From sequence record NC_019405.1: a DNA stretch of 64,000 nt; one strand, written 5' to 3'. Numbering within the stretch: the first letter of the stretch is position 1; each line of letters opens with the position of its first letter. The notes under the pieces are model-generated. The model saw only the letters and a list, made by a program, of their open reading frames with translations. It made no database searches and was not told the origin of the DNA. A program made the translations under genes and the position numbers. This document shows, in pieces, positions 8,448 to 64,000 of the stretch.

Positions 8448-8468
8448 CTTCCCCTCGAATTTGGCGGC

Positions 8469-8497: not shown

Positions 8498-8523
8498 GCA
8501 CCAATGTCGCTGGCTTTCGAGTG

Positions 8524-8552
8524 TTGACAAGTCCGGTGCTCGTCTATAGGGG
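8524..8552 (+). promoter_or_regulatory. rightward sigma70-type promoter cassette
   Basis: GTGTTGACA-17-TAGGGG, ACGACAA at 8561-8567, AAAGGAG SD. Confidence 0.7.
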
Positions 8553-8582
8553 AGACCGGGACGACAACGAAAGGAGCCTGCC

Positions 8583-47939: not shown

Positions 47940-48215
47940 GGTTTGTCAACCAAAGCCCTACTCCTCTATGGTCTAAAAAGGTACACATATTAAATACATT
48001 CTTAGTTTACTCTGTATATGTAAACCTCTCCCTATACTCTCTATAGCTCCTAAAAGGTAACCATATTTAATACATAGTTAGTAATATGTGTGTCTTTCTA
48101 CTCCTTTACTACCCATTTATTTATTATAGTTACTTTTTCTCCTATAGTGTAGGGTAGAGAAGAGAAAGAAGGATGAAAAGTGGACTATCTACTAAATGAA
48201 TAGATAATAATCCCT
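47940..48215. other. AT-rich non-coding island (candidate origin/unwinding element)
   Basis: 64 G+C in 210 nt (about 30%) hand-counted over 48001-48210; imperfect direct repeats at 47973-47999 and 48050-48075. Confidence 0.7.
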
Positions 48216-51759: not shown

Positions 51760-54492
51760 GTGAGCTACTATCCGATCGAGGACCGCGCCAAGGCCCGGTC
51801 CGTCGTCAAGAACCTGCTGGACCTTCAGCGCGAGGCGGTCAAGGCCTCGCGCGGCGGCCTGATCCTGCCGCCCGACCAGAAGGCGATCATCACCCAGGTC
51901 ACCGAGACCGAGGACCCGGCCCGCTGGGTCGACCTCCTGGGGCAGTTCGCCGATCGCGTCCAGACCGATCACCTCGCCCGGCTCAAGCCCCTGGCCAAGC
52001 ACGACTTCAACGCCTTCTGCGAATACGTCAACCCCGAGGAGGCCCCGGCCTCCAAGTGGCACGTCTACCTGACCTCGCTCCTCCAGGAGATCGAGAACAA
52101 CCACGAGCTTGAGCGCTTCGTGCTCAACTGCCCGCCCGGTCACGCCAAGCCGCTCGACGTCGACACCGAGGTCCTGATGGCCGACGGGTCCTGGAAGCGC
52201 CTGGGCGACATCGAGGTCGGCGAATACGTGGTCGGCGAGAGCGGCGCGCGTTGCAAGGTCACCGCCGTCCATGAGCAGGGCGATCTCGCCACCCTGAAGA
52301 TCACCACCGCCCACGGCCGCCAGATCATCGCCGCCTCCGATCACGCCTTCCGGGTCGGAAACACCTGGAAGGAGGCGGGCAAGCTGCGGCCGGGCGACGC
52401 TCTGTCCGTGGTCGGCGCCGCCAACCTCAACTACGACGCCAGCGGCAAGACCATCGACCACTTCGAGCTTGCCGCCTACCTCCAGGCCAAGGGCGGACGC
52501 TCCTACTTCCACCGCATCCACAAGAGCGGGCCGAAGACCTATCGCAACGTCTTCCTGTGGACCTCCGACCACCGCGAGGCCAGCAAGATCAGCGCCTGCC
52601 TCAAGCGCCTGGGGATCGCCTTCAAGGGGCGCCTCGCCAAGCACGAGCAGGTCTGGAAGATGCGTCTGGCCACCGAATGGGGCGACGCCCTGGCCGAGGA
52701 GTATGGCCTGGACGCGCGGATCGACGCGCGCCGGGTTCCGGCCTTTGTCACGAAAGGCGACGAGGAGCAGATCGCCCGCTACCTGTCGACCTACGCCTCC
52801 CTGGCTGGCGAGGCGCCCGACCGCTACACCATCCCGCGCATCATCCTCTACTTCAAGAACCCGGCCTTCGCCCGCGACATCCAGCGCCTGTTCGCCGTGG
52901 TCGGCGTCAACGCCCGCATCGAGGGGCGCAAGACCGGCCGCACCCGGCTGATCCTGTCGGGGCCGGACCTGGAGGCCTACTTCGCCGCCGGCCTGACCTA
53001 CACCGGCCCCAACGCCGACAAGCTCGACGACAAGCGCGCGGCCTTCCCGACCTCGCCCTCGCTCTTGGCCGACACCGTCACCTGGATCGAGCCGCACGGC
53101 GTGCGCCCCTGCCGCTGCCTGACCGTCGAGGACGAGCACACCTTCATCGCCGAAGGCGTGGTGGTCCACAACTCGACCTACGCCTCGCGCCTGTTCGTGG
53201 CGTGGCGCCTGGGGCGCGATCCGCGCCAGAAGATCATCGGCGGCGGTCACTCCCAGCGCTTCGTCGAGAACGAGTTCTCCGGCAAGATTCGCAACCTCGT
53301 GCGCACCCCGCAATACCGCGACGTGTTCCCCGACGTGGTCATCGACCACGCCACCTCGGCCAAGGACATGTGGGCGATCGCCGGGCACGGCGGACAGTAC
53401 GCCGCCAAGGGCGCGGGGCAGGCCATCCACGGTCTGCGCGCCCACTTCGTCTGCGTCGACGACCCCTACCGGTCGATCGAAGTGGCCGAGTCCGCGATCG
53501 AGCGCGAGAAGATCAAGACGTGGTTCTTCGGCGACGTTGGCTCGCGTCTGTTGCCGCTCGCCAAAGTATTCCTCATCATGACGCGCTTCCATGAGGAAGA
53601 TTTGACCGGGGAGATCATCAAACTCAACCAAGAAGTTCTCACCGGCGCCGACCGTTATCACATCGTTGAAGCGCCCGCCCTGTGCTACGACCCCGAAAAC
53701 GACGTCCTGGGTAGGGCTCTGGGCGAAGTTTTGTGGGACTACTATGACTTGCATTATTTCAAGCGCAAGCGGTCCGAGTGGAAGTACCAAAGATTTGCTT
53801 TGGTTTATCAACAACTTGCCGACGCGGCCTCGGACACCTCCATCGCGTCCAAGTTTCAGACCTACGATCACCTGCCCCACCTGGAGCCGAAGGTGCTCAA
53901 GGCCCGGCTTGACGCGGGTCACGCCGACGAGCGCGGGCGGCCGATTCCGGACCGCAAGGAGCACTTCCGGCGGGTGGTGGTCAGCGTCGACTCGGCCAAC
54001 AAGCCCGGCGCCCGCAACGACTACAGCGTCGCCCAGGTCTGGGGGGAGACCCACGCCCGCAAGCACTACCTGATCTACCAGGAGCGCAAGAAGGTCGACA
54101 TCACCGGCCTGACCGAGATGATCGAGCGGGTGGCCAAGCGCTACGAGGTCGACGCCATCCTGGTCGAAGACAAGGGCAACGGCACCGCCTACATCCAGGC
54201 GCGGGGCCAGACCGACAGCCAGCGGCGGCTCGCCCCGGCCCCGATCGAGGCGATCCAGGTCCCGAGCACCTATTCCAAGGAGTTCCGCTTCAACGAGATC
54301 GTCCCGATGATCGAGGCCGGCGAGGTCTTCCTGCCGGGCAAGGCCCCGTGGCTCGACCTGCTGATCCGCGAAATCGGTCAGTTCCCCGAAGGCGCCCATG
54401 ACGACCAAGTCGACGCCATGACGCAGTACCTCCGCTGGGCCAAGTCCAAGCGCACGCGGTTCGGCGCGCGCAAGGTCGGCTCGATGGGCTGA
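51760..54492 (+). CDS. terL: terminase large subunit containing an intein
   Basis: Walker A NCPPGHAK^ST, Walker B FVCVDDP, IMTRFH, nuclease VSVDSA...DYS, VEDKGNG, HDDQVDA. Confidence 0.95.
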   Translation: MSYYPIEDRAKARSVVKNLLDLQREAVKASRGGLILPPDQKAIITQVTETEDPARWVDLLGQFADRVQTDHLARLKPLAKHDFNAFCEYVNPEEAPASKWHVYLTSLLQEIENNHELERFVLNCPPGHAKPLDVDTEVLMADGSWKRLGDIEVGEYVVGESGARCKVTAVHEQGDLATLKITTAHGRQIIAASDHAFRVGNTWKEAGKLRPGDALSVVGAANLNYDASGKTIDHFELAAYLQAKGGRSYFHRIHKSGPKTYRNVFLWTSDHREASKISACLKRLGIAFKGRLAKHEQVWKMRLATEWGDALAEEYGLDARIDARRVPAFVTKGDEEQIARYLSTYASLAGEAPDRYTIPRIILYFKNPAFARDIQRLFAVVGVNARIEGRKTGRTRLILSGPDLEAYFAAGLTYTGPNADKLDDKRAAFPTSPSLLADTVTWIEPHGVRPCRCLTVEDEHTFIAEGVVVHNSTYASRLFVAWRLGRDPRQKIIGGGHSQRFVENEFSGKIRNLVRTPQYRDVFPDVVIDHATSAKDMWAIAGHGGQYAAKGAGQAIHGLRAHFVCVDDPYRSIEVAESAIEREKIKTWFFGDVGSRLLPLAKVFLIMTRFHEEDLTGEIIKLNQEVLTGADRYHIVEAPALCYDPENDVLGRALGEVLWDYYDLHYFKRKRSEWKYQRFALVYQQLADAASDTSIASKFQTYDHLPHLEPKVLKARLDAGHADERGRPIPDRKEHFRRVVVSVDSANKPGARNDYSVAQVWGETHARKHYLIYQERKKVDITGLTEMIERVAKRYEVDAILVEDKGNGTAYIQARGQTDSQRRLAPAPIEAIQVPSTYSKEFRFNEIVPMIEAGEVFLPGKAPWLDLLIREIGQFPEGAHDDQVDAMTQYLRWAKSKRTRFGARKVGSMG
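52150..53172 (+). mobile_element. intein (341 aa) with degenerate LAGLIDADG domain
   Basis: starts PLDVDTEVLMADGSWKRLGDIEVGEYV, block B ..SDHAF, block F RPCRCLTVED, ends VVHN before Ser+1; removal restores PPGHAKST. Confidence 0.92.
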
Positions 54493-54565
54493 CGAGGCCC
54501 GTTAACCACGTTTGTTAACCTCCGCCGGGGCCTTAACCCTAACACGGCGAGGGTTAACAGGTCCA

Positions 54566-54705
54566 GGGACCCTTCGAAATTAACCTTTCGGGGACCCTGG
54601 GAAATCGTAAGGCGGGGACCCTGGCCATTTTCCGGCTGGGGACCCTGGCAAATTCATCGCCGGGGACCCTCCGAAATTCATCCTCGGGGACCCTGGCAAA
54701 TCAAG
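54566..54705. repeat. six tandem ~24-bp units with GGGACCCT core and A/T tract
   Basis: units start at 54566, 54591, 54615, 54639, 54663, 54687. Confidence 0.9.
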
Positions 54706-54714
54706 GAGCCGGCG

Positions 54715-54906
54715 ATGGCCGAATTTCTCGCCCTGATCCCCAACCTCGCGCCGTTCCTGGCCTGGGGAATCCTCCTCTGGATCGCCGCCGAGGTGGTCTG
54801 GAGCGTCTGCCTCTGGGTCTATGGCCTGCGGACCCTGTTCAAGCTGCACCGCGACGATCTGGCCGAGGCGATCAGCTTCGAGCGGGCGCTCAGCCCCTTC
54901 GACTAG
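54715..54906 (+). CDS. small membrane protein, 63 aa
   Basis: AAGGAG SD; long hydrophobic segment. Confidence 0.7.
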   Translation: MAEFLALIPNLAPFLAWGILLWIAAEVVWSVCLWVYGLRTLFKLHRDDLAEAISFERALSPFD

Positions 54907-54989
54907 GCGCGGCCTGCCGACCTAAGTCACAGACTGTAGGTTTCGTGACAAGGTAGGATATTTCACAACGATTTCAAGGGCTTATACCT

Positions 54990-55253
54990 ATGACGATCCG
55001 ACACTACCTCCACGATCTGGCCGTCCGTTTCGTCGTTTTGGGGTGGATTTTTGCCAAAAAGCCCCGAAAAACCGCTCCAAAAGGGCAAAATTTTCAGCCC
55101 CATCCGCCGGCCCTGGTCGACTGGGACCACCGCTGGCTCTATCTGGCGGCCGGTACTGGGCTGACGGCGGTCTGGCTCTGCTTCAGATTCGTTGGTCCAA
55201 GTCAAGACCCCTCGACCGCCCCGCCGCCAAGTCATAGACCGTGGGCTTCGTGA
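54990..55253 (+). CDS. possible small membrane protein, 87 aa
   Basis: two short hydrophobic stretches; atypical codon usage and weak SD. Confidence 0.4.
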   Translation: MTIRHYLHDLAVRFVVLGWIFAKKPRKTAPKGQNFQPHPPALVDWDHRWLYLAAGTGLTAVWLCFRFVGPSQDPSTAPPPSHRPWAS

Positions 55254-55298
55254 CCAGATCACGCTTCCGTTACCGCTCCAGCCCTTGTGAGGCCTCGG

Positions 55299-55403
55299 AT
55301 GTTCGCCTTTCTCCGCCGGCTCAGCCTCGCCGCCGTCCATGGCGTGCTCTGGGCGATCCTCCTGGCGATGCTCGCCCTGGGCGGCCCGCGCCGCGCGCCC
55401 TAA
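55299..55403 (+). CDS. 34-aa hydrophobic peptide (absent from ORF track)
   Basis: GAGG SD; MFAFLRRLSLAAVHGVLWAILLAMLALGGPRRAP. Confidence 0.5.
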   Translation: MFAFLRRLSLAAVHGVLWAILLAMLALGGPRRAP

Positions 55404-55484
55404 AGCGTCATATCTGACGCCTAAAGCCCTCTAAGGGCTCATCTGTGAGACATTCAACGCCCTCGTGTTCCTCTGAACGCGGGG

Positions 55485-55612
55485 GCGTTTTGACGTCCGA
55501 GCGTTTTGACGCGGGCGCATTTTCGACTTGACGCGCGAGCGTTTTGACGCGGGCGCATTTTTGATTCGACGGGCGAGCGTTTTGACGTCCGAGCGTTTTT
55601 CAACTTGACGTC
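55485..55612. repeat. GCGTTTTGACG array with phased T-tracts
   Basis: copies at 55485, 55501, 55539, 55577; 25-bp unit at 55499 repeated at 55537. Confidence 0.85.
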
Positions 55613-55633
55613 GTTTCATTTACCGCGAGCGCC

Positions 55634-55813
55634 TTAGGGTTAACGCCGGCCGCCGAGCCCTGGGGCGATTTACCACCACCGCGTTAACCTAACGCCTGTT
55701 AACCTATCGGTTGTTAAGGTTAACGCCCCGTTAGGGTTAACGCCCCTTAACCCTGCGCCCGTTAAGGTTAACGCGCCCCGGCCCAGGCGCCGCCCGGCCC
55801 TACCCGTTAACCC
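55634..55813. repeat. cluster of ten TTAA(C) half-sites
   Basis: TTAA at 55640, 55684, 55699, 55714, 55720, 55737, 55747, 55762, 55768, 55807. Confidence 0.8.
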
Positions 55814-55839
55814 TAACCGCCCGACCCCCGCGCCCAGGC

Positions 55840-55875
55840 CATACCCGGTAGGGCCTGACGGCCCTACCGGGTATG
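55840..55875. repeat. perfect 16-bp inverted repeat with 4-nt loop
   Basis: CATACCCGGTAGGGCC-TGAC-GGCCCTACCGGGTATG. Confidence 0.9.
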
Positions 55876-55882
55876 CCCCCGC

Positions 55883-56001
55883 GCCCCGGCGGAGGCCAGG
55901 GACCGCCCCGGCGGAGGCCAGGGACCGCCCCGGCGGAGGCCAGGGACCGCCCCGGCGAGGGCCAGGGACCGCCTCGGCGAGGGCCAGGGACCGCCTCGGC
56001 G
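55883..56001. repeat. 5.4 tandem copies of a 22-bp unit
   Basis: GCCCCGGCGGAGGCCAGGGACC at 55883, 55905, 55927, with variants at 55949 and 55971. Confidence 0.95.
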
Positions 56002-56016
56002 CTTTTTCGCGCCCCG

Positions 56017-56048
56017 TTTACCTTTTGTTAACTTCTGGCCTCTAGGGT
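56017..56048 (+). promoter_or_regulatory. CtrA-box promoter cassette
   Basis: TTTA-N7-TTAAC-10-TAGGGT. Confidence 0.7.
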
Positions 56049-56096
56049 CGCCCTTGTCCCCGCCGCACTCCCGCGCCGGGCAAGGAGCTTCCCGCC

Positions 56097-56282
56097 ATGG
56101 TCCCCGACTCGATCATGAACCCCCGCGACCACTTCCACCGCCTGCGCGAGGAAACCGCCCGCGCTCTGGTCGAGACGTTCGCCGAAACCGACCCCGGCGA
56201 GGACTACCGCGCCGAGGAAAAGGCCGGCGCGTGGGTTGTCGCCTATTACGACGCGGCGGGCGAATTCGTCGCCTATCTCTAG
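56097..56282 (+). CDS. hypothetical protein, 61 aa
   Basis: AAGGAG SD. Confidence 0.7.
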   Translation: MVPDSIMNPRDHFHRLREETARALVETFAETDPGEDYRAEEKAGAWVVAYYDAAGEFVAYL

Positions 56283-56306
56283 CCGCCTTCGCCCCCTGGC
56301 GCCGCG

Positions 56307-56338
56307 TTAACGGTTTGTTAACATATCGGCGCCAGGGT
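56307..56338 (+). promoter_or_regulatory. CtrA-box promoter cassette
   Basis: perfect TTAA-N7-TTAAC, 10 nt, CAGGGT. Confidence 0.75.
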
Positions 56339-56381
56339 CGCCCTAGCCCGGCGCGTCGCCGCGCCTTCGGAGAAAACCGCC

Positions 56382-57185
56382 ATGCTCTACACCCCCGCCG
56401 CCCGCCGCCTTCGCGCCTATCGCGAAACCGCCGCGAAGAACGCCGAAATTCACGCCCGGCCGCACATGTCCGGCAACGTCGCCGGCTATAACGAGTCGGT
56501 TTGGCCGACGACGGCGCTAGGCGTCGCCGCCAAGGCTGGCGCCTTCAAGCGCCCCGAAACCGCCGGCAACTGGTCGGAAGATCGCAAGGCCTATTACGCC
56601 CCCGCGTGGCCGGCCGGCTGGCGCGTGCTGGGCACGGCCGAAGAGGTTTGCCGCAAGGAAGGTTCGCGCCGGGTGGAACATTCCGGATGGTACACGACGC
56701 CCGACGACTACAGCGCCACCCTTTCGGGCTATGTGCTGCAAATCCCCGCCCGCGACGGCCGCCCGCAATACGTCGCCGGAACCGCCCATAGTGAATGGGA
56801 CGGGGTGACCCTTTACCCCGCCGACCGTTTCGACAACCCGCTAGACGCGGCGAGCGCCGCCGACCGTCACGCCGAACGCGACGCCGAAGAGGAACGCGAA
56901 TATCAAACCGCGTGGCAAGCGGGCCAGCGCTACGCCGAACTCGGCGCCGAAGCCAAGGAGGCCCGCAAGGAAGCGCTGGCGATCCTCGCCGAACGCCGCA
57001 AGGTCAAGGGGCTGGAAACCCCCGCCTTGTGCGGCGCGATCCGGGCGCAAGTTGAGGCCCTGCTAAGCCGGATCGAAGAGGCGCGCGCCTCGCGCGCCAA
57101 GCTCAAGGAAGGCGAGGACTCGCGCCTCATGTTCTACCCCTCCGCCCGCATGGTCGCGGCCTTCAATGACGGGGCGGCCGGGTGA
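56382..57185 (+). CDS. hypothetical protein, 267 aa
   Basis: GGAG SD; GWYT....G.V.Q.P motif, coiled-coil C-terminus. Confidence 0.75.
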   Translation: MLYTPAARRLRAYRETAAKNAEIHARPHMSGNVAGYNESVWPTTALGVAAKAGAFKRPETAGNWSEDRKAYYAPAWPAGWRVLGTAEEVCRKEGSRRVEHSGWYTTPDDYSATLSGYVLQIPARDGRPQYVAGTAHSEWDGVTLYPADRFDNPLDAASAADRHAERDAEEEREYQTAWQAGQRYAELGAEAKEARKEALAILAERRKVKGLETPALCGAIRAQVEALLSRIEEARASRAKLKEGEDSRLMFYPSARMVAAFNDGAAG

Positions 57186-57391
57186 AGGTCGCCCGCGACG
57201 CCTTCGCCGTGTTCTGGACCCTCCCCGCCGGAGGCGTCCAGTTTCACGCCGACATGAAACGGGCGCTTTACCCGACCGCCCGCGACGCCGCCCGCGCTTT
57301 TAGCGCCATGTTCCCCCGTGACCGGGTCCGGAGCGTCCGCGACGCCTCCGGCCGCTTCCTGGCCTTCAAGGAGTCCGCCCCGTGCGCCTGA
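57182..57391 (+). CDS. hypothetical protein, 69 aa
   Basis: GTGA coupling. Confidence 0.6.
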   Translation: MKVARDAFAVFWTLPAGGVQFHADMKRALYPTARDAARAFSAMFPRDRVRSVRDASGRFLAFKESAPCA

Positions 57392-57663
57392 TCAGCTACA
57401 ACGTCAACGGAACCGGCTTTAAGGGCGGGTCCGCCGCCCCCGTCCCGTGTCCCGCCCTCGCCGGCCACGCCGACGACGCGGGGCTATGGGTTCCCGACCG
57501 TGAAGCCGTCGCCGCCATGCTCCCGCATCGCTGGCGCGCCGCCTTCGCCCGCGCGGCGTTTTGGTATGACGCCCGCGACAACAAAAAGCCTTGCCGCGCC
57601 GACCTCTACGACGCGCGCGGCCGGTACCTGACTCAGGTCTGGGCGCATCCGGTTTTCGCCTGA
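57382..57663 (+). CDS. hypothetical protein, 93 aa
   Basis: AAGGAG SD, GTG start. Confidence 0.65.
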   Translation: MRLISYNVNGTGFKGGSAAPVPCPALAGHADDAGLWVPDREAVAAMLPHRWRAAFARAAFWYDARDNKKPCRADLYDARGRYLTQVWAHPVFA

Positions 57664-57668
57664 CCAGA

Positions 57669-57692
57669 CGCCCCGGAAGATTTTCCGGGGCG
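57669..57692 (+). terminator. GC hairpin between gene and next promoter
   Basis: CGCCCCGGAA-GATT-TTCCGGGGCG; no immediate U-tract. Confidence 0.5.
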
Positions 57693-57724
57693 GTAACCTT
57701 TTGTTAACTTCTGGCCTCTAGGGT
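57693..57724 (+). promoter_or_regulatory. CtrA-box promoter cassette
   Basis: GTAA-N7-TTAAC-10-TAGGGT; 66 bp identical to 58889-58954. Confidence 0.75.
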
Positions 57725-57782
57725 GACTTTCGCCGCCGGGCAATCCCGCCCGCCGGACCCTCTTTCAAGGATTGCTCCCGTC

Positions 57783-58835
57783 ATGACCTCTCATTCCATG
57801 GTCGCGCACCGTTGGGCGCAGGACGACGAGAACGGCCGCACCGCGCGCGGCTTCAACATGTATTTCGAGCGCTACGGACGCGGCGCCGACCGCGTCAACG
57901 TGATTTTTTCCTACGGGACTCACTTCCCGGCCGCCGCCTTCGTGACCGATGCGCACGGCCGCCGCGTGGTCCTCTACACGACGCACCGCCGGAGCGTTTC
58001 GACCGCGAAACACCTTTCGCATATCCGTTGGGCTATCCCGTCGGGCGTGCCGGTGTTTTCCGTGCCGAACGTGTCGCGGATGCACAAGCCGGGCGGCGCG
58101 GGCGACTTCCACGGGGACAACCTGCGCGCCTATATCGAGAGCGCCGCCGGCCTCGCCGAAAAGGCCAAGCGCGCCCGCGTCTACGGCCCTTGGTTGCTTA
58201 GCCAAGCCCGCGACCAACTCGCCGAAGCGCAACGCTACGCCGACGCCTTCAAGGTCAAGGGCTTCAAGGTCCCGGCCTTGGAAGACGTCGCCGGCCAATG
58301 GGCGAAGATGACGGCCGCCAAGGCGCGGGCCGAAGCCAAGGCCCGCAAGGAAGCCGAAAAGCGAGCCCGCGAAGCCCGTGAAGCCGAACGGCTCGCCGAC
58401 GCCGAAGCCTTCGCCGCGTGGATGCGCGGCGAGCGCCAGAGCGCCCCGTTTAGCTACCGGGTGCGCGATGACGGGACCGTCTATCTTCGCCGCTTCCGGG
58501 GCGTGGTCCGCGACCTGCGCAGTCAAGAGCGCGACGGCTCGCGCGTCGATGAACTGCAAACCTCGCAAGGCGCGGCCGTGCCGTGGGAACACGCGGTAAA
58601 GGCCTTCCGGTTCATCAAGCTTTGCCGCGAACGCGGCGAGAGCTTCCACCGCAACGGCCGGGTGATTCGCGTCGGACACTTCCAAGTTGACGCGATCAGC
58701 CCGCAAGGCGACATGACGGCCGGTTGCCACCGGTTCGCGTGGGATGAAATCGAACGCCTCGCCAGGGCCGAAGGGGTTTTCGACCTCCCCGCCGCCGCCG
58801 ACGCCGTCGAAACCCGGCAAGCCGAACCGGCCTAA
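57783..58835 (+). CDS. hypothetical protein, 350 aa
   Basis: start moved to ATG 57783 (AAGGA SD); the track's GTG lies in the promoter. Confidence 0.75.
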   Translation: MTSHSMVAHRWAQDDENGRTARGFNMYFERYGRGADRVNVIFSYGTHFPAAAFVTDAHGRRVVLYTTHRRSVSTAKHLSHIRWAIPSGVPVFSVPNVSRMHKPGGAGDFHGDNLRAYIESAAGLAEKAKRARVYGPWLLSQARDQLAEAQRYADAFKVKGFKVPALEDVAGQWAKMTAAKARAEAKARKEAEKRAREAREAERLADAEAFAAWMRGERQSAPFSYRVRDDGTVYLRRFRGVVRDLRSQERDGSRVDELQTSQGAAVPWEHAVKAFRFIKLCRERGESFHRNGRVIRVGHFQVDAISPQGDMTAGCHRFAWDEIERLARAEGVFDLPAAADAVETRQAEPA

Positions 58836-58851
58836 GCCCGCCCGACCCTCC

Positions 58852-58881
58852 AGCGCCCCGGCTCCCCGCCGGGGCGCTTTC
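58852..58881 (+). terminator. intrinsic terminator
   Basis: AGCGCCCCGGC-TCCCC-GCCGGGGCGCT then TT. Confidence 0.65.
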
Positions 58882-58890
58882 GTGTACGCG

Positions 58891-58922
58891 GTAACCTTTT
58901 GTTAACTTCTGGCCTCTAGGGT
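58891..58922 (+). promoter_or_regulatory. CtrA-box promoter cassette
   Basis: GTAA-N7-TTAAC-10-TAGGGT. Confidence 0.75.
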
Positions 58923-58970
58923 GACTTTCGCCGCCGGGCAATCCCGCCCGCCGGCCAAGGATCGCAGACC

Positions 58971-59270
58971 ATGAATCTTTTCGTTGTCGCCATTGACCCC
59001 GCCCTCATCCCTTCGGCCGCCGGCTTCGTGGTCGCCTCCCCCTACGGGTGCGGCAAGTGGCGCGCGTGCGTCGGGAGCGAGGCGGACATGATCGCGCTTC
59101 GCGACAAGATGCGCCGCGCGCACCCGGCCCCGGAAGGCTACAGCGTCCAGCCCCTGGCGTCGTTCCTGGCCTATCTCGAAACGGTCGGTGAAAGCCCCTA
59201 TGACCGGTTCCGCGCCCATGACGCCGCCGCCCGCATCCTTGACACCCTGACGACTCATCTCGCCGCCTAG
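58971..59270 (+). CDS. hypothetical protein, 99 aa
   Basis: AAGGA SD. Confidence 0.7.
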   Translation: MNLFVVAIDPALIPSAAGFVVASPYGCGKWRACVGSEADMIALRDKMRRAHPAPEGYSVQPLASFLAYLETVGESPYDRFRAHDAAARILDTLTTHLAA

Positions 59271-59279
59271 CCCCTTCTC

Positions 59280-59308
59280 GCCCCCGGCGCGCGGCCGGGG
59301 GCGCTTTC
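59280..59308 (+). terminator. GC hairpin, possible terminator or stabiliser
   Basis: GCCCCCGGC-GCGCG-GCCGGGGGC then GCTTT. Confidence 0.45.
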
Positions 59309-59327
59309 CTCGAAAGGATCGCCGACC

Positions 59328-59696
59328 ATGACAACCCGTCTTATCGCCGTGCGCGGCCCGACCGCCGCCGAACTCGCCGACCCGTCCAGCCGCGCGGGCG
59401 GCGCCGAAGTCGTTTTCGAGCGCCGCGACCGCGAAGGCCGCACGCGCCTTGTGTTCGCCTCGACCTGCTACGGCTCATATCAGCAATGGGGCGAAACCCG
59501 CGACGTGCTCGCCGACAACGTCGAGGCGGTCACGCTCTGGGCCGAAGGCATGGCGGCCGTTGCCGCCCTCATCGACGAGAGCGACGACGACGACGCGCCC
59601 GACTGGGACGCCGTCACCGATGGAATCGCCTCCTTTGATCACGCCCGCGCCATGGACGGGGAAAACCCGGTCATGCGCGACGACGGGGAGGCGTGA
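59328..59696 (+). CDS. hypothetical protein, 122 aa
   Basis: AAAGGA SD. Confidence 0.7.
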   Translation: MTTRLIAVRGPTAAELADPSSRAGGAEVVFERRDREGRTRLVFASTCYGSYQQWGETRDVLADNVEAVTLWAEGMAAVAALIDESDDDDAPDWDAVTDGIASFDHARAMDGENPVMRDDGEA

Positions 59697-59699
59697 GCC

Positions 59700-60119
59700 G
59701 TGCGCACAACCAAGGCTCAACGCTTCGCCGCCATCGCCTTTGACGCCCTCGCCAAGGCCCTAAGCGAGCCGCGCCAAGCCGTCGCCCGCGTGACCAAATG
59801 GGAGGGCGCGGGCCATAGCTTCGCCAACCTCCAGCGCGATTATGAGCGATACGGCCCCGGCGCCCGCTCATGGTTCGGCCGGGCTGAAATGCGCTTCTTT
59901 GGGACGCGCCTAGAGGCCGCGCCGCTGGACTTCCCGGCGCTGGCCTGCACCCTCTTTCTGACCTCCGAAACCCCGCCCGGCGCCGGCCGGGTCTGGACCC
60001 TTCGCGCCTATGTCTGGGCTTCGGCCGATATCACCACGCTAACCCATGGCGACGAAACCGACGCGGCGACCGCGCAAGCGGCCTTTGACCTGCTTTGGCG
60101 GGTTCTCGCCGCCCGGTAA
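59700..60119 (+). CDS. hypothetical protein, 139 aa
   Basis: GGAGG SD, GTG start. Confidence 0.65.
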   Translation: MRTTKAQRFAAIAFDALAKALSEPRQAVARVTKWEGAGHSFANLQRDYERYGPGARSWFGRAEMRFFGTRLEAAPLDFPALACTLFLTSETPPGAGRVWTLRAYVWASADITTLTHGDETDAATAQAAFDLLWRVLAAR

Positions 60120-60147
60120 CCTTTTGTTAACTTCTGCCCGCTAGGGT
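60116..60147 (+). promoter_or_regulatory. CtrA-box promoter cassette
   Basis: GTAA-N7-TTAAC-10-TAGGGT; first half-site overlaps the upstream TAA stop. Confidence 0.75.
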
Positions 60148-60195
60148 CTTCTTGCGGCCGGGCAATCCCGCCCGGCCGCCCAAGGATTGGACCGC

Positions 60196-60468
60196 ATGAC
60201 CCGCGCTCAAGCCCTCGCCGAAATGAACGCCCTTCCCGGTATCATCGCCTCTTTTGAGCGCGAGACGGGCGAATATCGCGTGACCCTGCGCTTTGGCCCG
60301 CTCCCCATGGGGCGTGGCGCTCAAGACTGGATGAACAAGCGCCGCGAAGCCGTCGCCAGCTACAGCGACGACAAGGCCGACGCCCTGGCCACCGCCCGCG
60401 ACATGTCCGCCCGTTGGGAGGCGATGAACGCCGAAGAGCGTTCGCGCCTCTATCACAACCCCGCCTAA
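60196..60468 (+). CDS. hypothetical protein, 90 aa
   Basis: start moved to ATG 60196 (AAGGA SD). Confidence 0.7.
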   Translation: MTRAQALAEMNALPGIIASFERETGEYRVTLRFGPLPMGRGAQDWMNKRREAVASYSDDKADALATARDMSARWEAMNAEERSRLYHNPA

Positions 60469-60478
60469 AGCCCCGCGC

Positions 60479-60504
60479 GCCGCCCTGGCCTTCGCCGGGG
60501 CGGC
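60479..60504 (+). terminator. GC hairpin, possible terminator or stabiliser
   Basis: GCCGCCCTGGC-CTTC-GCCGGGGCGGC. Confidence 0.45.
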
Positions 60505-60534
60505 TCCCTCAACCCCTCGCAAGGATCGCACCCC

Positions 60535-60819
60535 ATGACCGCCCGTAAGCCCCTGACCAAGGAACAAAAGGCCCGCCGCCGCGCGACCCGTCGCGCCGCC
60601 CGCCTCAACTGGTCGGATGAGCGCCGCGCCCGCGAATTCGAGCGTCAAGCCCGCTTCTTCCTAATGATCGCCACCCGCGCCCAAGGCGCCGGCCAAGGCC
60701 AGGAAGCCGCCCGCCTCGCCACGGTCGCACAACGCAAGGTGACAAACTGGCGCATGGCGCAGGCCTGCGCCCGGATTAACGCCCTGGCCGTGCATCCTTG
60801 GGCGGGGGTCGCCTCCTAA
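60535..60819 (+). CDS. basic hypothetical protein, 94 aa
   Basis: AAGGA SD; Arg/Ala-rich. Confidence 0.65.
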   Translation: MTARKPLTKEQKARRRATRRAARLNWSDERRAREFERQARFFLMIATRAQGAGQGQEAARLATVAQRKVTNWRMAQACARINALAVHPWAGVAS

Positions 60820-61001
60820 TGGCCCGCCGCGTCCGCTACATGCCGTCCGAAGCTCTGGACCTCGCCGACGCGCTCGGCGAGGGGCTGGACCTCGTTAAGG
60901 CGATGAGCGAGGCCCGCCGCGCGGGCGCGCCTATCGCCGACACCCTCGCCGCCCTCGAAGACTGGGCTTTAACCGCCGTCAACCTCATAGAAGAGGACTA
61001 A
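60819..61001 (+). CDS. hypothetical protein, 60 aa
   Basis: TAATG coupling; start moved to ATG 60819. Confidence 0.65.
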   Translation: MARRVRYMPSEALDLADALGEGLDLVKAMSEARRAGAPIADTLAALEDWALTAVNLIEED

Positions 61002-61006
61002 ACCCA

Positions 61007-61189
61007 ATGACGCACCCTCACGCCCTGGCGCTGATCGCCCTCGCCGAAAAGGTGTTGCCGCTTACCCGGCTGCACCCGCTCGACCAACGCGCCGCCGCCG
61101 TCGACCTAATCGGCGACCTCTACGCCCTCGCCGACTCCATTGACGCCACCCCGCAAGCCGCCGCCCTGGCGCAACCGAAGGCCGCCTAA
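61007..61189 (+). CDS. hypothetical protein, 60 aa
   Basis: GAGGA SD. Confidence 0.65.
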   Translation: MTHPHALALIALAEKVLPLTRLHPLDQRAAAVDLIGDLYALADSIDATPQAAALAQPKAA

Positions 61190-61192
61190 GCC

Positions 61193-61783
61193 ATGAACCC
61201 GAACCGCTACCGCCTCGCGCCCCGCGACCGCTTCAGCCGCGAGCTTGCCGAAACGCTCTATCAGGCGGCCGAAGCCGTCGCCCGCGTGATTCCGCTAGTG
61301 CCGGAGTCCGTCCCCGATGAGCGCCGCGCGCTGGGCAAGGTCCGCGCCGACCTGCTAACCCATAGCGCCGGCGCCCTTGTTCCCAAGCCGCCGGCCGCCG
61401 TGCTCGCAACCCTCGTTTGGGTTGTCGAGATGGCGCAAGATCGCGCGACCAACGCCGATTTCAACACCGCCCAAGAGGGACTCGACGAACACGAGTCCCT
61501 AGCCTTTGTCGCCGACTGGCTGGAAGCCGAAGGCCAGGACGTGACGCCGATTCGCAACGCGCAACCGTCCGCCGACGCCCTGGCCGAACTCGCCGCCCGT
61601 CGCGACGCCGAACAAGAGGCGCTAGACGCCTTGGAGGCCGCCGCCCTGGCCGAAGCGCCGGGCGACGTGATCACCGAAGCCTTGCGCCCCTATCTGGGCG
61701 CCACCCTGGCCGAAAACCACGCCGACGACGTGCTAGACGCCCTCACGCGCGCCGGCTTCCAAATCACCCGCAAGGAGGCTTAA
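61193..61783 (+). CDS. hypothetical helical protein, 196 aa
   Basis: GAAGG SD. Confidence 0.7.
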   Translation: MNPNRYRLAPRDRFSRELAETLYQAAEAVARVIPLVPESVPDERRALGKVRADLLTHSAGALVPKPPAAVLATLVWVVEMAQDRATNADFNTAQEGLDEHESLAFVADWLEAEGQDVTPIRNAQPSADALAELAARRDAEQEALDALEAAALAEAPGDVITEALRPYLGATLAENHADDVLDALTRAGFQITRKEA

Positions 61784-61787
61784 GACC

Positions 61788-62366
61788 ATGTCCCGCGCCG
61801 TTTCCACCTTCGCCACCCCTGAAAAGCTCATCGGGGGTTACCTCATGTCGGCGGCCCGTCACGGGGCCATGACCGAAGCCGCCGAAGTCATCGCCACCCT
61901 AGAGGCGGCCGGCTATGTGATCGCCCGCCGCCGCGACGTCTTCACCGATGAGGGCGAGAAGCTGGGCGACCTGTTGGCGGCGCTTTATGACGCCGTCCCG
62001 AACTACGCCGTAAGATCGCAGCGCCTCGCCGACGCCCTCAAGCCGGCGCGAGACTACGTCTATCAGCCCCGGTTCCGGGTCAAGCTGGACGCCGCGCCCG
62101 GCGCGCGCCTGACCGACTGCGACACGGGCGCAACGGTCTATTTCCAGCCGGGCGACGACGCCGACGCCTTCCGGGCCGAATTCGCCCCGTGGGTTCACGA
62201 CGCCAATGTGACGGCCGAAGGCGCGGCCCTGGCCTCGATGATGAACCCGACGGCCGAAGAGTATTTCAGCGCCAGCGGGGAAGATGACGACTTGCCCGGC
62301 GCGCTTTCCGCCTTCGATTCCGCCGGCTCCGGCCAAAGACTGGGCTACGTTCGCCCGCCTCGCTAA
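61788..62366 (+). CDS. hypothetical protein, 192 aa
   Basis: AAGGAGG SD. Confidence 0.7.
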   Translation: MSRAVSTFATPEKLIGGYLMSAARHGAMTEAAEVIATLEAAGYVIARRRDVFTDEGEKLGDLLAALYDAVPNYAVRSQRLADALKPARDYVYQPRFRVKLDAAPGARLTDCDTGATVYFQPGDDADAFRAEFAPWVHDANVTAEGAALASMMNPTAEEYFSASGEDDDLPGALSAFDSAGSGQRLGYVRPPR

Positions 62367-62463
62367 GTCATCATTCCTACCGTCTATGACTTGTCACCGG
62401 CCGAAGTCTTACCCGGTGACAGTCTGGGCAAGTAAAGCTCACTCTGGATTTTATGACTTAGCG
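62361..62463. repeat. nested inverted-repeat block
   Basis: CGCTAAGTCAT (62361) / ATGACTTAGCG (62453); inner AAGTCAT..ATGACTT and TGTCACCGG..CCGGTGACA. Confidence 0.75.
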
Positions 62464-62547
62464 CAAAGGATTGAAATTGCTCGAAAAATTCCTAGAAGCT
62501 CACAAAGTCGTTTTCTGGCTGCTCTTGCTGGCCTGTTTGTGGCGCTT

Positions 62548-62580
62548 TTAACGGTTTGTTAACCCCTGGCCCTCTAGGGT
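62548..62580 (+). promoter_or_regulatory. CtrA-box promoter cassette
   Basis: perfect TTAA-N7-TTAAC, 11 nt, TAGGGT. Confidence 0.75.
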
Positions 62581-62634
62581 CGAATTCCCGGCGCGGCAAT
62601 CCCGCCGCCCCGGCCTTCCTTCGGAGCTTCCAAA

Positions 62635-63081
62635 ATGTTCGCTTCCGTGACCCTTCCCGCCCATGACGCCCAAGGCCTGAGCCTCGAAACCGTCCACATG
62701 GTTTTCGCCCGCGAACTGGCGCAACATTTCGACCACGTGATTTCCGCCCCCGTGGTCGAAAGCTGGCGCGACGAGGAAACCGGCGCCGACCACGCGCAAG
62801 CCGCCGTTTGCTTCACCGTCTCGGCGACCCCGGCCGCGTGGGAAGCCAAGGGCGGGCGCCTCGCGCGCCGGCTGGAAAACCTCGCCGCGCGCTATGCCGC
62901 CGACTGTGACGCCCCGGCCCTGACTGTCACCCATTGCGACGGGCAAACGGTCTATGTCGGCGCTCTGGAAGCCCTGGCGCGCCCCGCTCCGGTGCAAGGC
63001 CCGACCCGCGACGCGGACCCGGCTTTCCTCCCCCGCCAGCGTGAGGACAAGGCCGCCCGCTTCGATCGCCTGACCGCCTAG
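62635..63081 (+). CDS. hypothetical protein, 148 aa
   Basis: GGAG SD. Confidence 0.7.
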   Translation: MFASVTLPAHDAQGLSLETVHMVFARELAQHFDHVISAPVVESWRDEETGADHAQAAVCFTVSATPAAWEAKGGRLARRLENLAARYAADCDAPALTVTHCDGQTVYVGALEALARPAPVQGPTRDADPAFLPRQREDKAARFDRLTA

Positions 63082-63097
63082 CCCCTGGCCTTCCCCT

Positions 63098-63130
63098 AGC
63101 GCACCGCCCCTAGAAAGGCGGTGCGCTTTT
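63098..63130 (+). terminator. intrinsic terminator
   Basis: AGCGCACCGCC-CCTAGAAA-GGCGGTGCGCT then TTT. Confidence 0.7.
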
Positions 63131-63139
63131 CTGTGTCTG

Positions 63140-63172
63140 TTTACTTGTTGTTAAGGAATAGCCTGCTAGTGT
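63140..63172 (+). promoter_or_regulatory. CtrA-box-like promoter cassette
   Basis: TTTA-N7-TTAAG-11-TAGTGT. Confidence 0.55.
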
Positions 63173-63223
63173 CCCCTTGTCGGCGGACGCATCCCGCGCC
63201 CGCCCCTCTCTGGATCGCTCCCC

Positions 63224-63616
63224 ATGGCCCGCCCTTCTGACCTGCTCAACGTCAACGCCGCCCGCGTCCTGGCTTGCCTTGAGCCTATCGCCGCCGCCGC
63301 TAAGACCGCCCCGGCCGCCGACCGCGCCGCCCTTTCCTACCTGCTCGACGCTGGCGAGTATGTCGCCGCGTGGCGCCGCAACCTCACGGAAACCGACCGC
63401 CGCAAGGCCTATGGCGCGGCCTGCGCCGCCGAAGCCCTGGCGCTCGCCAACGCCTATCAGCCCGCCACCCTGCAAGGCGGCGCCGTCCGCCGCGCTCTGG
63501 GCGCCTATGCCGCCGCCCTAAAGGTCCTGCTAGACGGGGAGCCGGTTAAGGCGGTCCGCGCCGCCGAAGGCGCGGCGCTTTCGGTCCGCGCTCGCTACGC
63601 CAACACCCGCCTTTAA
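63224..63616 (+). CDS. Ala-rich hypothetical protein, 130 aa
   Basis: ORF after promoter; TAA stop is part of the next CtrA box. Confidence 0.7.
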   Translation: MARPSDLLNVNAARVLACLEPIAAAAKTAPAADRAALSYLLDAGEYVAAWRRNLTETDRRKAYGAACAAEALALANAYQPATLQGGAVRRALGAYAAALKVLLDGEPVKAVRAAEGAALSVRARYANTRL

Positions 63617-63644
63617 CCTCTTGTTAACACCCCCCGGCTATGGT
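63613..63644 (+). promoter_or_regulatory. CtrA-box promoter cassette
   Basis: perfect TTAA-N7-TTAAC, 10 nt, TATGGT. Confidence 0.7.
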
Positions 63645-63670
63645 CGGGGGGTCGCAAGGAGACACCCGAC

Positions 63671-63865
63671 ATGACCCGTTCCGGCCCCGCCTCGCTCCTG
63701 ACCCCGCAAGCCCGCTTCTCGTCGCCGCGCGTCCTGATCCTTCCGGGCGCGGCTCCCATGCCGATTCGCCAGCCGCGCGGCCTTTGCGCCGTCGAGTGCG
63801 TCGCCCTTGGCGTGACGCTGGGCGCGGCGCTCTACCTCGCCGCCCGCGTGTTCGGTCTGGTCTGA
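63671..63865 (+). CDS. small protein with C-terminal hydrophobic helix, 64 aa
   Basis: AAGGAG SD. Confidence 0.55.
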   Translation: MTRSGPASLLTPQARFSSPRVLILPGAAPMPIRQPRGLCAVECVALGVTLGAALYLAARVFGLV

Positions 63866-63876
63866 CCAGACCCCCG

Positions 63877-63902
63877 CCCCGGCCCTACCGGTAAGGCCGG
63901 GG
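63877..63902. repeat. imperfect palindrome sharing GGCCCTACCGG with 55860-55870
   Basis: CCCCGGCCCTACCGGTAAGGCCGGGG. Confidence 0.65.
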
Positions 63903-64000
63903 GTGTGTCCCATAATGAGACACCCCCCGCCACCTAGTATCTTTTTTGATTCGGAGGGACCCAAAGGCCCCCTACGTTAACCATTTTTGGCGGCGCCCCC

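What the first reader, a model, noticed from the sequence alone, without database searches (positions are those of the whole stretch)
56058..62608. Conserved AAUCCC-loop hairpin with covarying stems in early leaders
Seen: CGGGC-AATCCC-GCCCG (57737, 58935), GCGGCCGGGC-AATCCC-GCCCGGCCGC (60154), GCGGC-AATCCC-GCCGC (62593) and CGC-ACTCCC-GCG (56064). The stems change compensatorily, the loop does not, and the hairpin lies inside the predicted transcript. In 57783 and 60196 CAATCC is also complementary to the SD region GGATTG. Inference: a boxB-like RNA signal for a phage or host protein (antitermination past the cassette terminators, protection from host shut-off), or an SD-sequestering switch.
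Basis: partly seen in the sequence, partly recalled or inferred. Interest (0 to 1): 0.65.

Follow-up and report, generated by a model that had tools for sequence, protein, structure and literature searches.

The report
Leader hairpins behind phage CtrA promoters
In the terminal repeat of Caulobacter phage phiCbK, six promoters driven by the host regulator CtrA are each followed, at about the first bases of the RNA, by a GC-rich hairpin with an (A)AUCCC-type loop. This element is undescribed and most likely protects these short mRNAs, but its function is untested.

Summary

- **Context:** the window is phage phiCbK, and the finding lies in its 10.3-kb direct terminal repeat. The repeated upstream motif is the published CtrA-box promoter (PMC9437464); that paper does not mention the hairpin.
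- **Specificity:** a covariance model finds the hairpin only behind these six promoters. It finds none in the other ~205 kb of the phage or in a host Caulobacter genome.
- **Conservation:** in 15 related phages most CtrA-box promoters carry a hairpin starting 6-13 nt after the -10 hexamer, at about +1 to +4 of the predicted RNA. Arms covary, and orthologous genes swap between a few hairpin types. The core GC-(A)AUCCC-GC stays fixed.
- **Best reading (about 0.45):** a 5'-terminal protective stem-loop that is part of a mobile promoter cassette.
the boxB/antitermination and SD-switch readings are not excluded but fail several tests.
- **New here:** the same cap sits on one terminator outside the repeat, and gene gp013 has an arginine-rich N-terminus that loosely recalls lambda N.

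This scan already found the same element in phages Magneto, Karma and CcrPW. The transcript start and the function remain untested.

The parts
56017..56048 (+). CtrA box (TTTAC-N6-TTAAC, 56017-56032) and -10 hexamer TAGGGT (56043-56048) of the gp004 cassette
   Evidence: Motif as published in PMC9437464.
56059..56080 (+). Leader hairpin CCCG-C-CGC[ACUCCC]GCG-C-CGGG. Loop at 56067-56072.
   Evidence: R1 hit 56051-56087, 28.1 bits. Fold.
56350..56365 (+). Leader hairpin of another class, GGCGCG[UCGC]CGCGCC, behind the gp005 CtrA-box promoter (box 56307-56322, -10 at 56333-56338)
   Evidence: The gp005 promoter was shown to be CtrA-dependent in PMC9437464.
57693..57724 (+). CtrA box (57693-57708) and -10 TAGGGT (57719-57724) of the gp008 cassette
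57733..57756 (+). Leader hairpin CCG-C-CGGGC[AAUCCC]GCCCG-C-CGG. Loop at 57742-57747.
   Evidence: R1 hit, 41.4 bits. Fold.
58891..58922 (+). CtrA box (58891-58906) and -10 TAGGGT (58917-58922) of the gp009 cassette
58930..58955 (+). Leader hairpin GCCG-C-CGGGC[AAUCCC]GCCCG-C-CGGC. Loop at 58940-58945.
   Evidence: R1 hit, 42.4 bits. Fold.
60116..60147 (+). CtrA box (60116-60131) and -10 TAGGGT (60142-60147) of the gp012 cassette
60154..60179 (+). Leader hairpin with a perfect 10-bp stem, GCGGCCGGGC[AAUCCC]GCCCGGCCGC. Loop at 60164-60169. Its first base is the predicted +1.
   Evidence: R1 hit, 45.1 bits. -27 kcal/mol, z -3.4.
62548..62580 (+). CtrA box (62548-62563) and -10 TAGGGT (62575-62580) of the gp018 cassette
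   Evidence: The gp018 promoter was shown to be CtrA-dependent in PMC9437464.
62588..62613 (+). Leader hairpin CCGG-C-GCGGC[AAUCCC]GCCGC-C-CCGG. Loop at 62598-62603.
   Evidence: R1 hit, 36.2 bits. Fold.
63140..63172 (+). CtrA box (63140-63155) and -10 TAGTGT (63167-63172) of the gp019 cassette
63182..63204 (+). Loop at 63191-63195.
   Evidence: R1 hit, 32.5 bits. Fold.
60535..60819 (+). gp013, 94 aa, with an arginine-rich N-terminal helix (KEQKARRRATRRAARLNWSDERR). A speculative candidate binder only.
   Evidence: No family or fold match.

Best explanation
The element is an RNA stem-loop at the very 5' end of the mRNAs made from the CtrA-dependent promoters of the phiCbK terminal repeat. It is the third module of a repeated, mobile regulatory cassette: (terminator) - CtrA box plus -10 - hairpin - Shine-Dalgarno - small ORF.

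The helix begins 0-4 nt after the predicted start. It would therefore bury the 5' end and shield these short transcripts from 5'-end-dependent decay (RppH and the RNase E 5' sensor, possibly RNase J). It would also isolate the ribosome site from whatever lies upstream.

The fixed core GC-(A)AUCCC-GC is a selected cap of the hairpin. Whether a protein reads it is open.

Shown: existence, strand, position relative to the promoter motifs, restriction to these cassettes, conservation and compensatory change across phages. Inferred: the transcription start (7th nt after TANNNT), folding in vivo, and the stabilising effect.
For: - Identity: the window matches phiCbK JX100813 at 100%, inside the annotated terminal repeat.
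- Promoters: CtrA binds and activates the gp005 and gp018 promoters (PMC9437464).
- Specificity in the window: R1 gives six hits of 28 bits or more, all behind CtrA boxes, and the next best is 18 bits.
- Specificity elsewhere: no hit in the other 150 kb of the genome (best 16.6 bits). None in a Caulobacter vibrioides genome (best 23 bits, inside a CDS; no exact core).
- Spread: 75 hits (43 distinct) in 13 phages' repeats.
- Enrichment: a perfect stem of 5 bp or more occurs in 70% of 84 distinct leaders, against 20-29% of shuffled or random genomic controls. For 7 bp or more it is 31% against 2-3%.
- Position: stems start 6-13 nt after the -10 hexamer.
- Covariation: in the AAUCCC class (28 distinct sequences) 88.6% of cells pair, against 33-54% when the partners are slid. 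Four pairs change on both sides. The covariation score is 0.166 against 0.081 in shuffles, reached by 0 of 500.
- Hairpin swapping: orthologous genes keep a hairpin while its sequence is replaced. The gp004 family carries six different hairpins, and gp012 of phage BL57 has GGGCGGGGG[AUCG]CCCCCGCCC.
- Distant relatives: Colossus and CcrPW keep GGCGC[AUCCC]GCGCC and add further classes.
- Cap on a terminator: the same cap sits on a 3' terminator hairpin, and its orthologues have AAUCCC, AUCCC or UUCCC loops. This fits a role of the hairpin as such.
Against: - No transcription start has been mapped. The RNA-seq runs are held only as contigs, which break at the repeated cassettes.
- Known 5' stabiliser hairpins need no particular loop, so the invariant 12-nt core GGCAAUCCCGCC is left unexplained.
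- The cassettes are paralogous copies. Part of the sequence conservation is therefore shared descent, and the shuffle controls overstate significance.
- Folding energies of single leaders are not exceptional for this GC content.
- In Brevundimonas phage Bambus many CtrA-box promoters lack any hairpin, so the hairpin is not needed for promoter function.
Confidence: 0.45

Rival explanations
1. The hairpin cap is a specific recognition site for a protein, phage-encoded or host. That protein would act on the nascent early transcripts, either by boxB/N-like antitermination through the cassette terminators or by timed protection or destruction of early mRNAs. A speculative phage candidate is gp013, a conserved 94-aa helical protein with an arginine-rich N-terminus.
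For: - The loop and three closing pairs are invariant in 28 distinct sequence contexts, while the outer stem and flanks vary.
- The hairpin is about the size of boxB (5 bp plus a 5-6 nt loop).
- Terminators separate the cassettes.
- gp013 reads ARRRATRRAARLNW. By my recollection, lambda N has the same RRR-to-W spacing.
- The RRAARLNWSDE core of gp013 is conserved as far as Colossus and CcrPW.
Against: - The loops are pyrimidine-rich and cannot form the GNRA-like fold of boxB.
- There is no transcribed boxA.
- Three to five loop classes coexist in one phage.
- The same cap closes a terminator.
- gp013 has no family, sequence or fold match. It is predicted to be a folded helical hairpin rather than disordered like N.
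- Every cassette has its own promoter, so read-through is not obviously needed.
Confidence: 0.2
2. The loop (AUCC) pairs with the downstream Shine-Dalgarno GGAU(U) and tunes or switches translation.
For: - CAAUCC is complementary to GGAUUG in the gp008 and gp012 leaders.
- The ACUCCC loop of gp004 goes with a GGAG SD.
- GGAU follows 21 of 45 leaders with AUCC loops, against 3 of 39 others. A rough genome-wide count gives 16%.
Against: - The SD varies freely under an unchanged hairpin within the gp012 family.
- GGAUCG SDs occur without any hairpin in phage Bambus.
- The leaders are copies of one another, so the counts are not independent.
- The 4-nt linker after the 10-bp stem of gp012 is too short for a pseudoknot (my inference).
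- The terminator copy of the cap has no SD partner.
- In that same leader GGA is instead displayed in the small hairpin CCAA[GGA]UUGG.
Confidence: 0.1
3. The hairpin has no function of its own. The inverted repeat travels with a promoter cassette that spreads by duplication and recombination, or it acts only at the DNA level as a recombination site or operator.
For: - The cassettes are clearly paralogous and sit where genes are gained, lost and swapped (PMC9437464).
- Phage Ccr29 has a promoter fused directly to the gp013 reading frame, without a hairpin.
- Composite promoter/stem-loop cassettes (PeSLs) mediate shuffling in T4-like phages (PMC2839356 and PMC4122927).
Against: - Many unrelated hairpin sequences occupy the same position behind the same promoter type, including in distant genera.
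- Arms change in a compensatory way, and arm length and loop size vary. This does not fit a single DNA-binding protein or plain hitch-hiking.
- The loop is more conserved than the stem, the reverse of neutral expectation.
Confidence: 0.15

Closest known systems
5'-terminal stem-loop mRNA stabilisers
   Same: A stable hairpin within a few nucleotides of the 5' end of the transcript, upstream of and separate from the ribosome site.
   Different: Those need no specific loop. Here a 12-nt core (three closing pairs and the loop) is invariant, and the element is repeated behind every promoter of one class. The start site and the effect on half-life are not measured here.
PeSL promoter/stem-loop cassettes of T4-like phages (PMC2839356, PMC4122927)
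   Same: A short composite regulatory cassette, an early host-type promoter plus a stem-loop, repeated between small genes of unknown function in a plastic genome region. It is associated with gene shuffling.
   Different: In PeSLs the stem-loop is described as a terminator combined with the promoter. Here the conserved hairpin lies downstream of the promoter, lacks a U tract, and would be at the 5' end of the RNA. The promoter is CtrA-dependent.
Lambda-type nut sites (boxA plus boxB bound by N)
   Same: A small GC-stem hairpin with a conserved 5-6 nt loop just downstream of early promoters, in a region with terminators. A small early protein with an arginine-rich N-terminus is encoded nearby.
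   Different: The loop chemistry differs (A plus pyrimidines, not a purine-rich GNRA-like fold). There is no boxA, several loop classes coexist, and the cap is also present on a terminator. No homology to N.
C(UUCG)G hairpins of phage T4 intercistronic regions
   Same: One particular hairpin cap is reused at many places in a phage's transcripts, both within leaders and at 3' ends.
   Different: UUCG is a known extra-stable tetraloop. Nothing is known about the stability of C(AAUCCC)G or C(AUCCC)G.

Membership tests
lambda-type nut site (boxA/boxB) | boxB: 5-bp stem with a purine-rich pentaloop that folds like a GNRA tetraloop | tested here: not met
   The loops are AAUCCC, AUCCC, ACUCCC, ACUUCC, AACCC, ACCCC, ACACC, AUCGG and AUUGG.
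lambda-type nut site (boxA/boxB) | A transcribed boxA element a few nucleotides 5' of boxB | tested here: not met
   The helix starts 0-4 nt after the predicted start. The CUCUUG-like tract lies between the -10 hexamer and +1. This rests on an inferred start site.
lambda-type nut site (boxA/boxB) | A cognate N-type arginine-rich protein encoded by an early gene | tested here: inconclusive
   gp013 has an ARM-like N-terminus conserved across genera. It has no family, sequence or fold match, and RNA binding cannot be tested with these tools.
5'-terminal stem-loop stabiliser | Hairpin begins within about 4 nt of the mRNA 5' end | tested here: inconclusive
   This is met if transcription starts 7 nt after TANNNT; the hairpins start 6-13 nt after the hexamer. 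No start-site data exist: the RNA-seq contigs are uninformative.
5'-terminal stem-loop stabiliser | Removing the hairpin shortens the mRNA half-life in an RNase E / 5'-end-dependent way | not testable with these tools
   Needs rifampicin chase of wild-type, stem-broken and stem-restored leaders.
PeSL-type mobile promoter/stem-loop cassette | A repeated composite of early promoter and stem-loop between small ORFs in a plastic region, at the boundaries of gene gain, loss or swap | tested here: met
   Six to ten cassettes per repeat in 15 phages. Orthologous genes carry different hairpin types. Phage Ccr29 has a duplication junction at a cassette. PMC9437464 reports gain and loss of the sites.
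PeSL-type mobile promoter/stem-loop cassette | The stem-loop is an effective terminator combined with the promoter | tested here: not met
   The conserved hairpin lies downstream of the -10 and has no U tract. Separate terminators lie upstream of some promoters.
any Rfam family | A match to a curated covariance model | tested here: not met
   There is no relevant hit at E of 1 or less over 53700-64000.
N4-type hairpin promoter for a virion RNA polymerase | DNA hairpin with a 5-7 bp stem and a 3-nt loop placed upstream of the start | tested here: not met
   The loops are 5-6 nt, and the hairpin lies downstream of a standard -10 hexamer and a CtrA box. I did not search for a virion polymerase gene.

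The most novel reading that the evidence does not exclude
GC-(A)AUCCC-GC is a dedicated RNA recognition cap. A phage protein made early (candidate: the arginine-rich gp013) or a host factor would read it. This would mark every CtrA-driven terminal-repeat transcript, and one tRNA-cluster terminator, for a common fate: antitermination, timed stabilisation or timed destruction. That would amount to a post-transcriptional layer on top of the CtrA 'lytic deferment' circuit.
Probability: 0.17. Interest if true: 0.75.

Novelty: new variant of a known kind. Interest (0 to 1): 0.5.

Why it matters
phiCbK is the standard phage of the Caulobacter cell-cycle field. Its CtrA-driven terminal-repeat genes are the proposed basis of 'lytic deferment'. 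A conserved RNA element at the 5' end of all these transcripts means their output is probably also set after transcription.

The published lacZ fusions of gp005 and gp018 included these hairpins without this being noted. The element gives a small, directly testable handle (stem swaps, loop changes) on early phage mRNA fate in an alphaproteobacterium. It is also a compact 5' module that could be reused in Caulobacter expression constructs.

Tried and rejected
1. **Start sites from RNA-seq.** Four RNA-seq runs hold the stretch, but only as contigs, and these break at the repeated cassettes. They give no start sites and no proof of transcription. The temporal class of gp004-gp020 could not be found in the held supplements of PMC10688885.
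2. **Pair counts on alignment A2.** The GGCGC[AUCCC]GCGCC class is aligned one column out of register, so 15 of 43 rows read as unpaired and the +1 slide scores as high as the true structure. I used the single-class alignment A3 instead.
3. **Loose hairpin measure.** Best-hairpin energy with internal loops allowed does not separate leaders from random GC-rich 48-mers. I replaced it with perfect-stem length.
4. **Clamp idea.** The hairpin might bring the pyrimidine tract between -10 and +1 onto the SD, so that only read-through RNA is silenced. This pairing is seen in 44% of leaders, but also in 50% with that tract shuffled and 35% with random genomic tracts. Rejected.
5. **G-U versus A-C counts as a strand test.** The count is biased by how I called the stems. 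Not used.
6. **SD accessibility probabilities.** My coordinates were off by 1-2 nt and the values looked unreliable. Not used.
7. **Host origin.** No copy exists in a C. vibrioides genome, although only 150 of 5828 first-look candidates were scored.
8. **IMG/VR pattern scan.** It returned mostly chance hits and known genomes.
9. **gp013.** Pfam, PHROGs, PDB sequence and Foldseek searches all gave nothing.
10. **Complex prediction.** Not used, because that tool takes no RNA.


Full report
**What the DNA is**

Window 56000-62700 is 100% identical to Caulobacter phage phiCbK (JX100813, positions 2287-8987) and to near-identical isolates. The finding lies inside the annotated 10,287-bp direct terminal repeat. 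That repeat carries about 20 small genes, all annotated 'hypothetical protein'.

The repeated motif upstream of each hairpin (GTAAC/TTAAC/TTTAC-N6-TTAAC, then about 10 nt, then TAGGGT or TAGTGT) is the CtrA box. It overlaps the -35 region of a host-type promoter. Mascolo et al. 2022 (PMC9437464) showed that CtrA binds the gp005 and gp018 promoter fragments, and that both need CtrA for expression. They also noted that such sites are concentrated in the terminal repeats of phiCbK-like phages. That paper contains no occurrence of 'hairpin', 'stem-loop' or 'leader'. Neither does the phiCbK genome paper (PMC3556154). No Rfam family matches the region.

**Checking the observation**

A sixth member was missed, at 63182-63204: GGCGG-A-CGC[AUCCC]GCG-C-CCGCC, behind the gp019 promoter. 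The gp005 promoter carries a hairpin of another class, GGCGCG[UCGC]CGCGCC, at 56350-56365.

The hexamer AATCCC by itself is not enriched. I built a covariance model from 43 distinct copies in 13 phages. Run with filters off over the whole window, it gives six hits of 28-45 bits. All are on the + strand and directly behind CtrA boxes, and nothing else scores above 18 bits.

- The remaining 150 kb of the phiCbK genome has no hit above 16.6 bits.
- CtrA-box promoters are likewise almost confined to the repeat.
- A Caulobacter vibrioides genome has no convincing copy. The best hit is 23 bits, inside a coding region, and the core never matches exactly. Only part of the first-look candidates were scored.

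**Comparative evidence**

I read the terminal repeats of phiCbK, Magneto, Karma, Ccr2, Ccr5, Ccr29, BL10, Rogue, Swift, BL57, RBC8, BL64, Colossus and CcrPW. I also read a CtrA-box-rich region of Brevundimonas phage Bambus.

Nearly every CtrA-box promoter of the Caulobacter phages is followed by a GC-rich hairpin.

| Measure | 84 distinct leaders | Shuffled or random genomic controls |
|---|---|---|
| Perfect stem of 5 bp or more | 70% | 20-29% |
| Perfect stem of 7 bp or more | 31% | 2-3% |

The 5' base of the helix lies 6-13 nt after the -10 hexamer.

The hairpins fall into a small repertoire:
- stems CCGGGC/GCCCGG or GCGGC/GCCGC with loop AAUCCC;
- stem GGCGC/GCGCC with loop AUCCC (also AACCC, ACCCC, ACACC, ACUUCC);
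- CGC[ACUCCC]GCG;
- in Colossus and CcrPW, GGCGGGA[CGG]UCCCGCC and GGGCGGCGG[AUCGG]CCGCCGCCC;
- in Bambus, various stems with loop AUUGG.

Within the AAUCCC class (28 distinct sequences) the three closing pairs and the loop never vary. The outer seven pairs and the flanks do vary.
- 88.6% of cells pair, against 33-54% when the partners are slid.
- Four pairs change on both sides (for example G-C to C-G at 8/29 in 9 sequences).
- The covariation score is twice the shuffled mean and is reached by 0 of 500 shuffles.

These sequences are related copies, so the shuffle figure overstates significance. The slid controls are the fairer comparison.

The more telling evidence comes from orthologous genes, which keep a hairpin while exchanging its identity.
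- The gp004 family carries six different hairpins across phages.
- The gp012 leader of BL57 has GGGCGGGGG[AUCG]CCCCCGCCC where all others have the 10-11 bp AAUCCC hairpin.
- Rogue and RBC8 differ in the same way for another gene.
- GGCGC[AUCCC]GCGCC is shared between genera.

What is selected is therefore a hairpin at this place, drawn from a short list of allowed caps.

**Where it sits in the RNA**

The hexamers TAGGGT, TAGTGT, TAATGT, TATGGT and CAGGGT keep the A at position 2 and the T at position 6 (TANNNT, or CANNNT in one), as a sigma-70-type -10 element should. This is my reading, from established promoter knowledge.

The seventh base after the hexamer is usually the only purine in a pyrimidine tract, the G of CTTG. 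If transcription starts there, the helix begins at +1 (gp012), +2 (gp009, gp018), +2 to +3 (gp008) or +4 (gp004, gp019).

This is an inference. The only RNA-seq runs that hold the stretch are kept as contigs. These break at the repeated cassettes and say nothing about starts.

Single leaders fold well but not exceptionally for 75% G+C, with z from +0.3 to -3.4. In every case the dominant structure is the hairpin, and the SD is left outside it.

**How it most likely works**

The anatomy fits a 5'-terminal protective stem-loop: a stable GC helix within four nucleotides of the 5' end, separate from the ribosome site, and present on every transcript of one promoter class in an array of very short operons. 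Established work in E. coli shows that such a helix blocks 5'-end-dependent entry of RNase E and pyrophosphate removal. I take this as the most likely function (about 0.45).

It does not explain why the cap is fixed.

One further observation bears on this. In the whole genome the only other AAUCCC-capped hairpin with a perfect stem of 6 bp or more is an annotated intrinsic terminator at phiCbK 53,017-53,040: CCCGCCAGC[AAUCCC]GCUGGCGGG followed by UCGUUUCGUUUU. Its orthologue keeps AAUCCC in BL57, has AUCCC in Rogue and UUCCC in BL10, on a rearranged stem.

The same two cap variants thus recur on a 3' hairpin with an unrelated stem. This argues that GC-(A)AUCCC-GC matters for the hairpin itself, through stability, folding or a reader that binds hairpins at either end of an RNA. 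It argues against a role tied to leaders or to ribosome sites.

*BoxB-like antitermination.*
- For: the size and placement are reminiscent, and terminators do separate the cassettes.
- For: I also found a candidate partner. gp013 (60535-60819) is a 94-aa protein conserved at 77-98% identity among phiCbK-like phages. Its N-terminal helix reads KEQKARRRATRRAARLNWSDERR. By my recollection of lambda N, the spacing from the RRR cluster to the W is the same. The RRAARLNWSDE core survives in Colossus and CcrPW.
- Against: the loops are pyrimidine-rich, and no boxA can be transcribed.
- Against: several loop classes coexist in one phage, and the cap also closes a terminator.
- Against: gp013 has no family, sequence or fold match. 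It is predicted to be a folded two-helix hairpin.
- I keep this reading at about 0.2 as a protein-recognition hypothesis in general.

*SD sequestration.*
- For: GGAU follows 47% of AUCC-loop leaders against 8% of others. The copies are not independent.
- Against: the SD varies under a constant hairpin within the gp012 family.
- Against: GGAUCG-type SDs occur without hairpins in Bambus.
- Against: geometry is unfavourable where the complementarity is best (my inference).

A related idea was that the hairpin clamps the tract upstream of +1 onto the SD in read-through RNA only. It fails its control.

*DNA-level operator.* This is unlikely, because arm sequence, arm length and loop size all vary.

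**Comparison with what is known, and novelty**

In function the element looks most like a 5' stabiliser hairpin. As a genomic object it looks most like the PeSL promoter/stem-loop cassettes of T4-like phages (PMC2839356, PMC4122927). It differs from PeSLs in that the hairpin lies downstream of the promoter and is not a terminator.

I found no description of it in the phiCbK literature held here.

This scan has already reported the same element from the terminal repeats of phages Magneto, Karma and CcrPW, with the same leaning. The present window is therefore a further, concordant instance. It adds:
- the genome-wide and host-genome specificity tests;
- the terminator copy of the cap;
- the gp013 lead;
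- the negative control for the clamp idea.

I class it as a new variant of a known kind, of moderate interest.

Noticed in passing
L014:43018-43041 (phiCbK 53,017-53,040); orthologues in L164, L165, L166: An annotated intrinsic terminator after the tRNA cluster carries the same cap: CCCGCCAGC[AAUCCC]GCUGGCGGG plus a U-rich tail. The BL57 orthologue keeps AAUCCC, Rogue has AUCCC and BL10 has UUCCC, on a rearranged stem.
   Followed up: partly
window 60535-60819: gp013 is a 94-aa protein found only in phiCbK-like phages. Its N-terminal helix is arginine-rich (ARRRATRRAARLNW) and recalls the lambda N RNA-binding motif. It is predicted to be a two-helix hairpin (pLDDT 82), with no family or fold match.
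   Followed up: partly
window 63621-63660 (gp020 cassette); BL10, Rogue and RBC8 gp013 cassettes in L006, L007, L010: In a second cassette type the inverted repeat straddles the -10 hexamer, for example ACCCCCC-GGCTATGGTC-GGGGGGT. Its arms show compensatory changes between phages (CCTCCC/GGGAGG, CCCCCTG/CAGGGGG).
   Followed up: no
window 60180-60190: In the gp012 leader the SD GGA sits in the loop of a 4-bp mini-hairpin, CCAA[GGA]UUGG, directly after the 10-bp leader hairpin.
   Followed up: no
L005:9789-9860 (phage Ccr29): A CtrA-box promoter is fused directly to the gp013 reading frame, with no hairpin and no ATG (..CTCCTTGACCGCCCGTAAG..). It marks the junction of a 2.6-kb duplication within the terminal repeat.
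   Followed up: no
L017 (Brevundimonas phage Bambus, ON529853, 328919-348100, reverse strand): About 20 CtrA-box promoters precede small genes. Most have short leaders without a hairpin (a recurrent GGATCGAAACGGAGAC). A few carry hairpins with an AUUGG or ACUGG loop.
   Followed up: partly
L047:834-886, L074:275-327, L075:8955-9007 (IMG/VR metagenome contigs): Lower-GC phage-like contigs carry an identical GCGGC[AAUCCC]GCCGC hairpin about 35 nt after TTGTTAAC and upstream of an SD and ATG. It is conserved between two sequence variants. This may be chance or an independent occurrence.
   Followed up: partly
window 54545-54700, 55440-55620, 55620-55800 and 55873-55995: The non-coding left part of the terminal repeat holds several repeat arrays: GGGGACCCTGG units; GAGCGTTTTGACG units; a dense cluster of GTTAAC/TTAAC half-sites; and five tandem copies of a 21-22-nt unit, CCCCGGCG(G)AGGCCAGGGACCG.
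   Followed up: no
window about 47980-48090, minus strand: A strikingly AT-rich stretch (TACTAACTATGTATTAAATATGG...) in a genome of 66% G+C, seen in the output.
   Followed up: no
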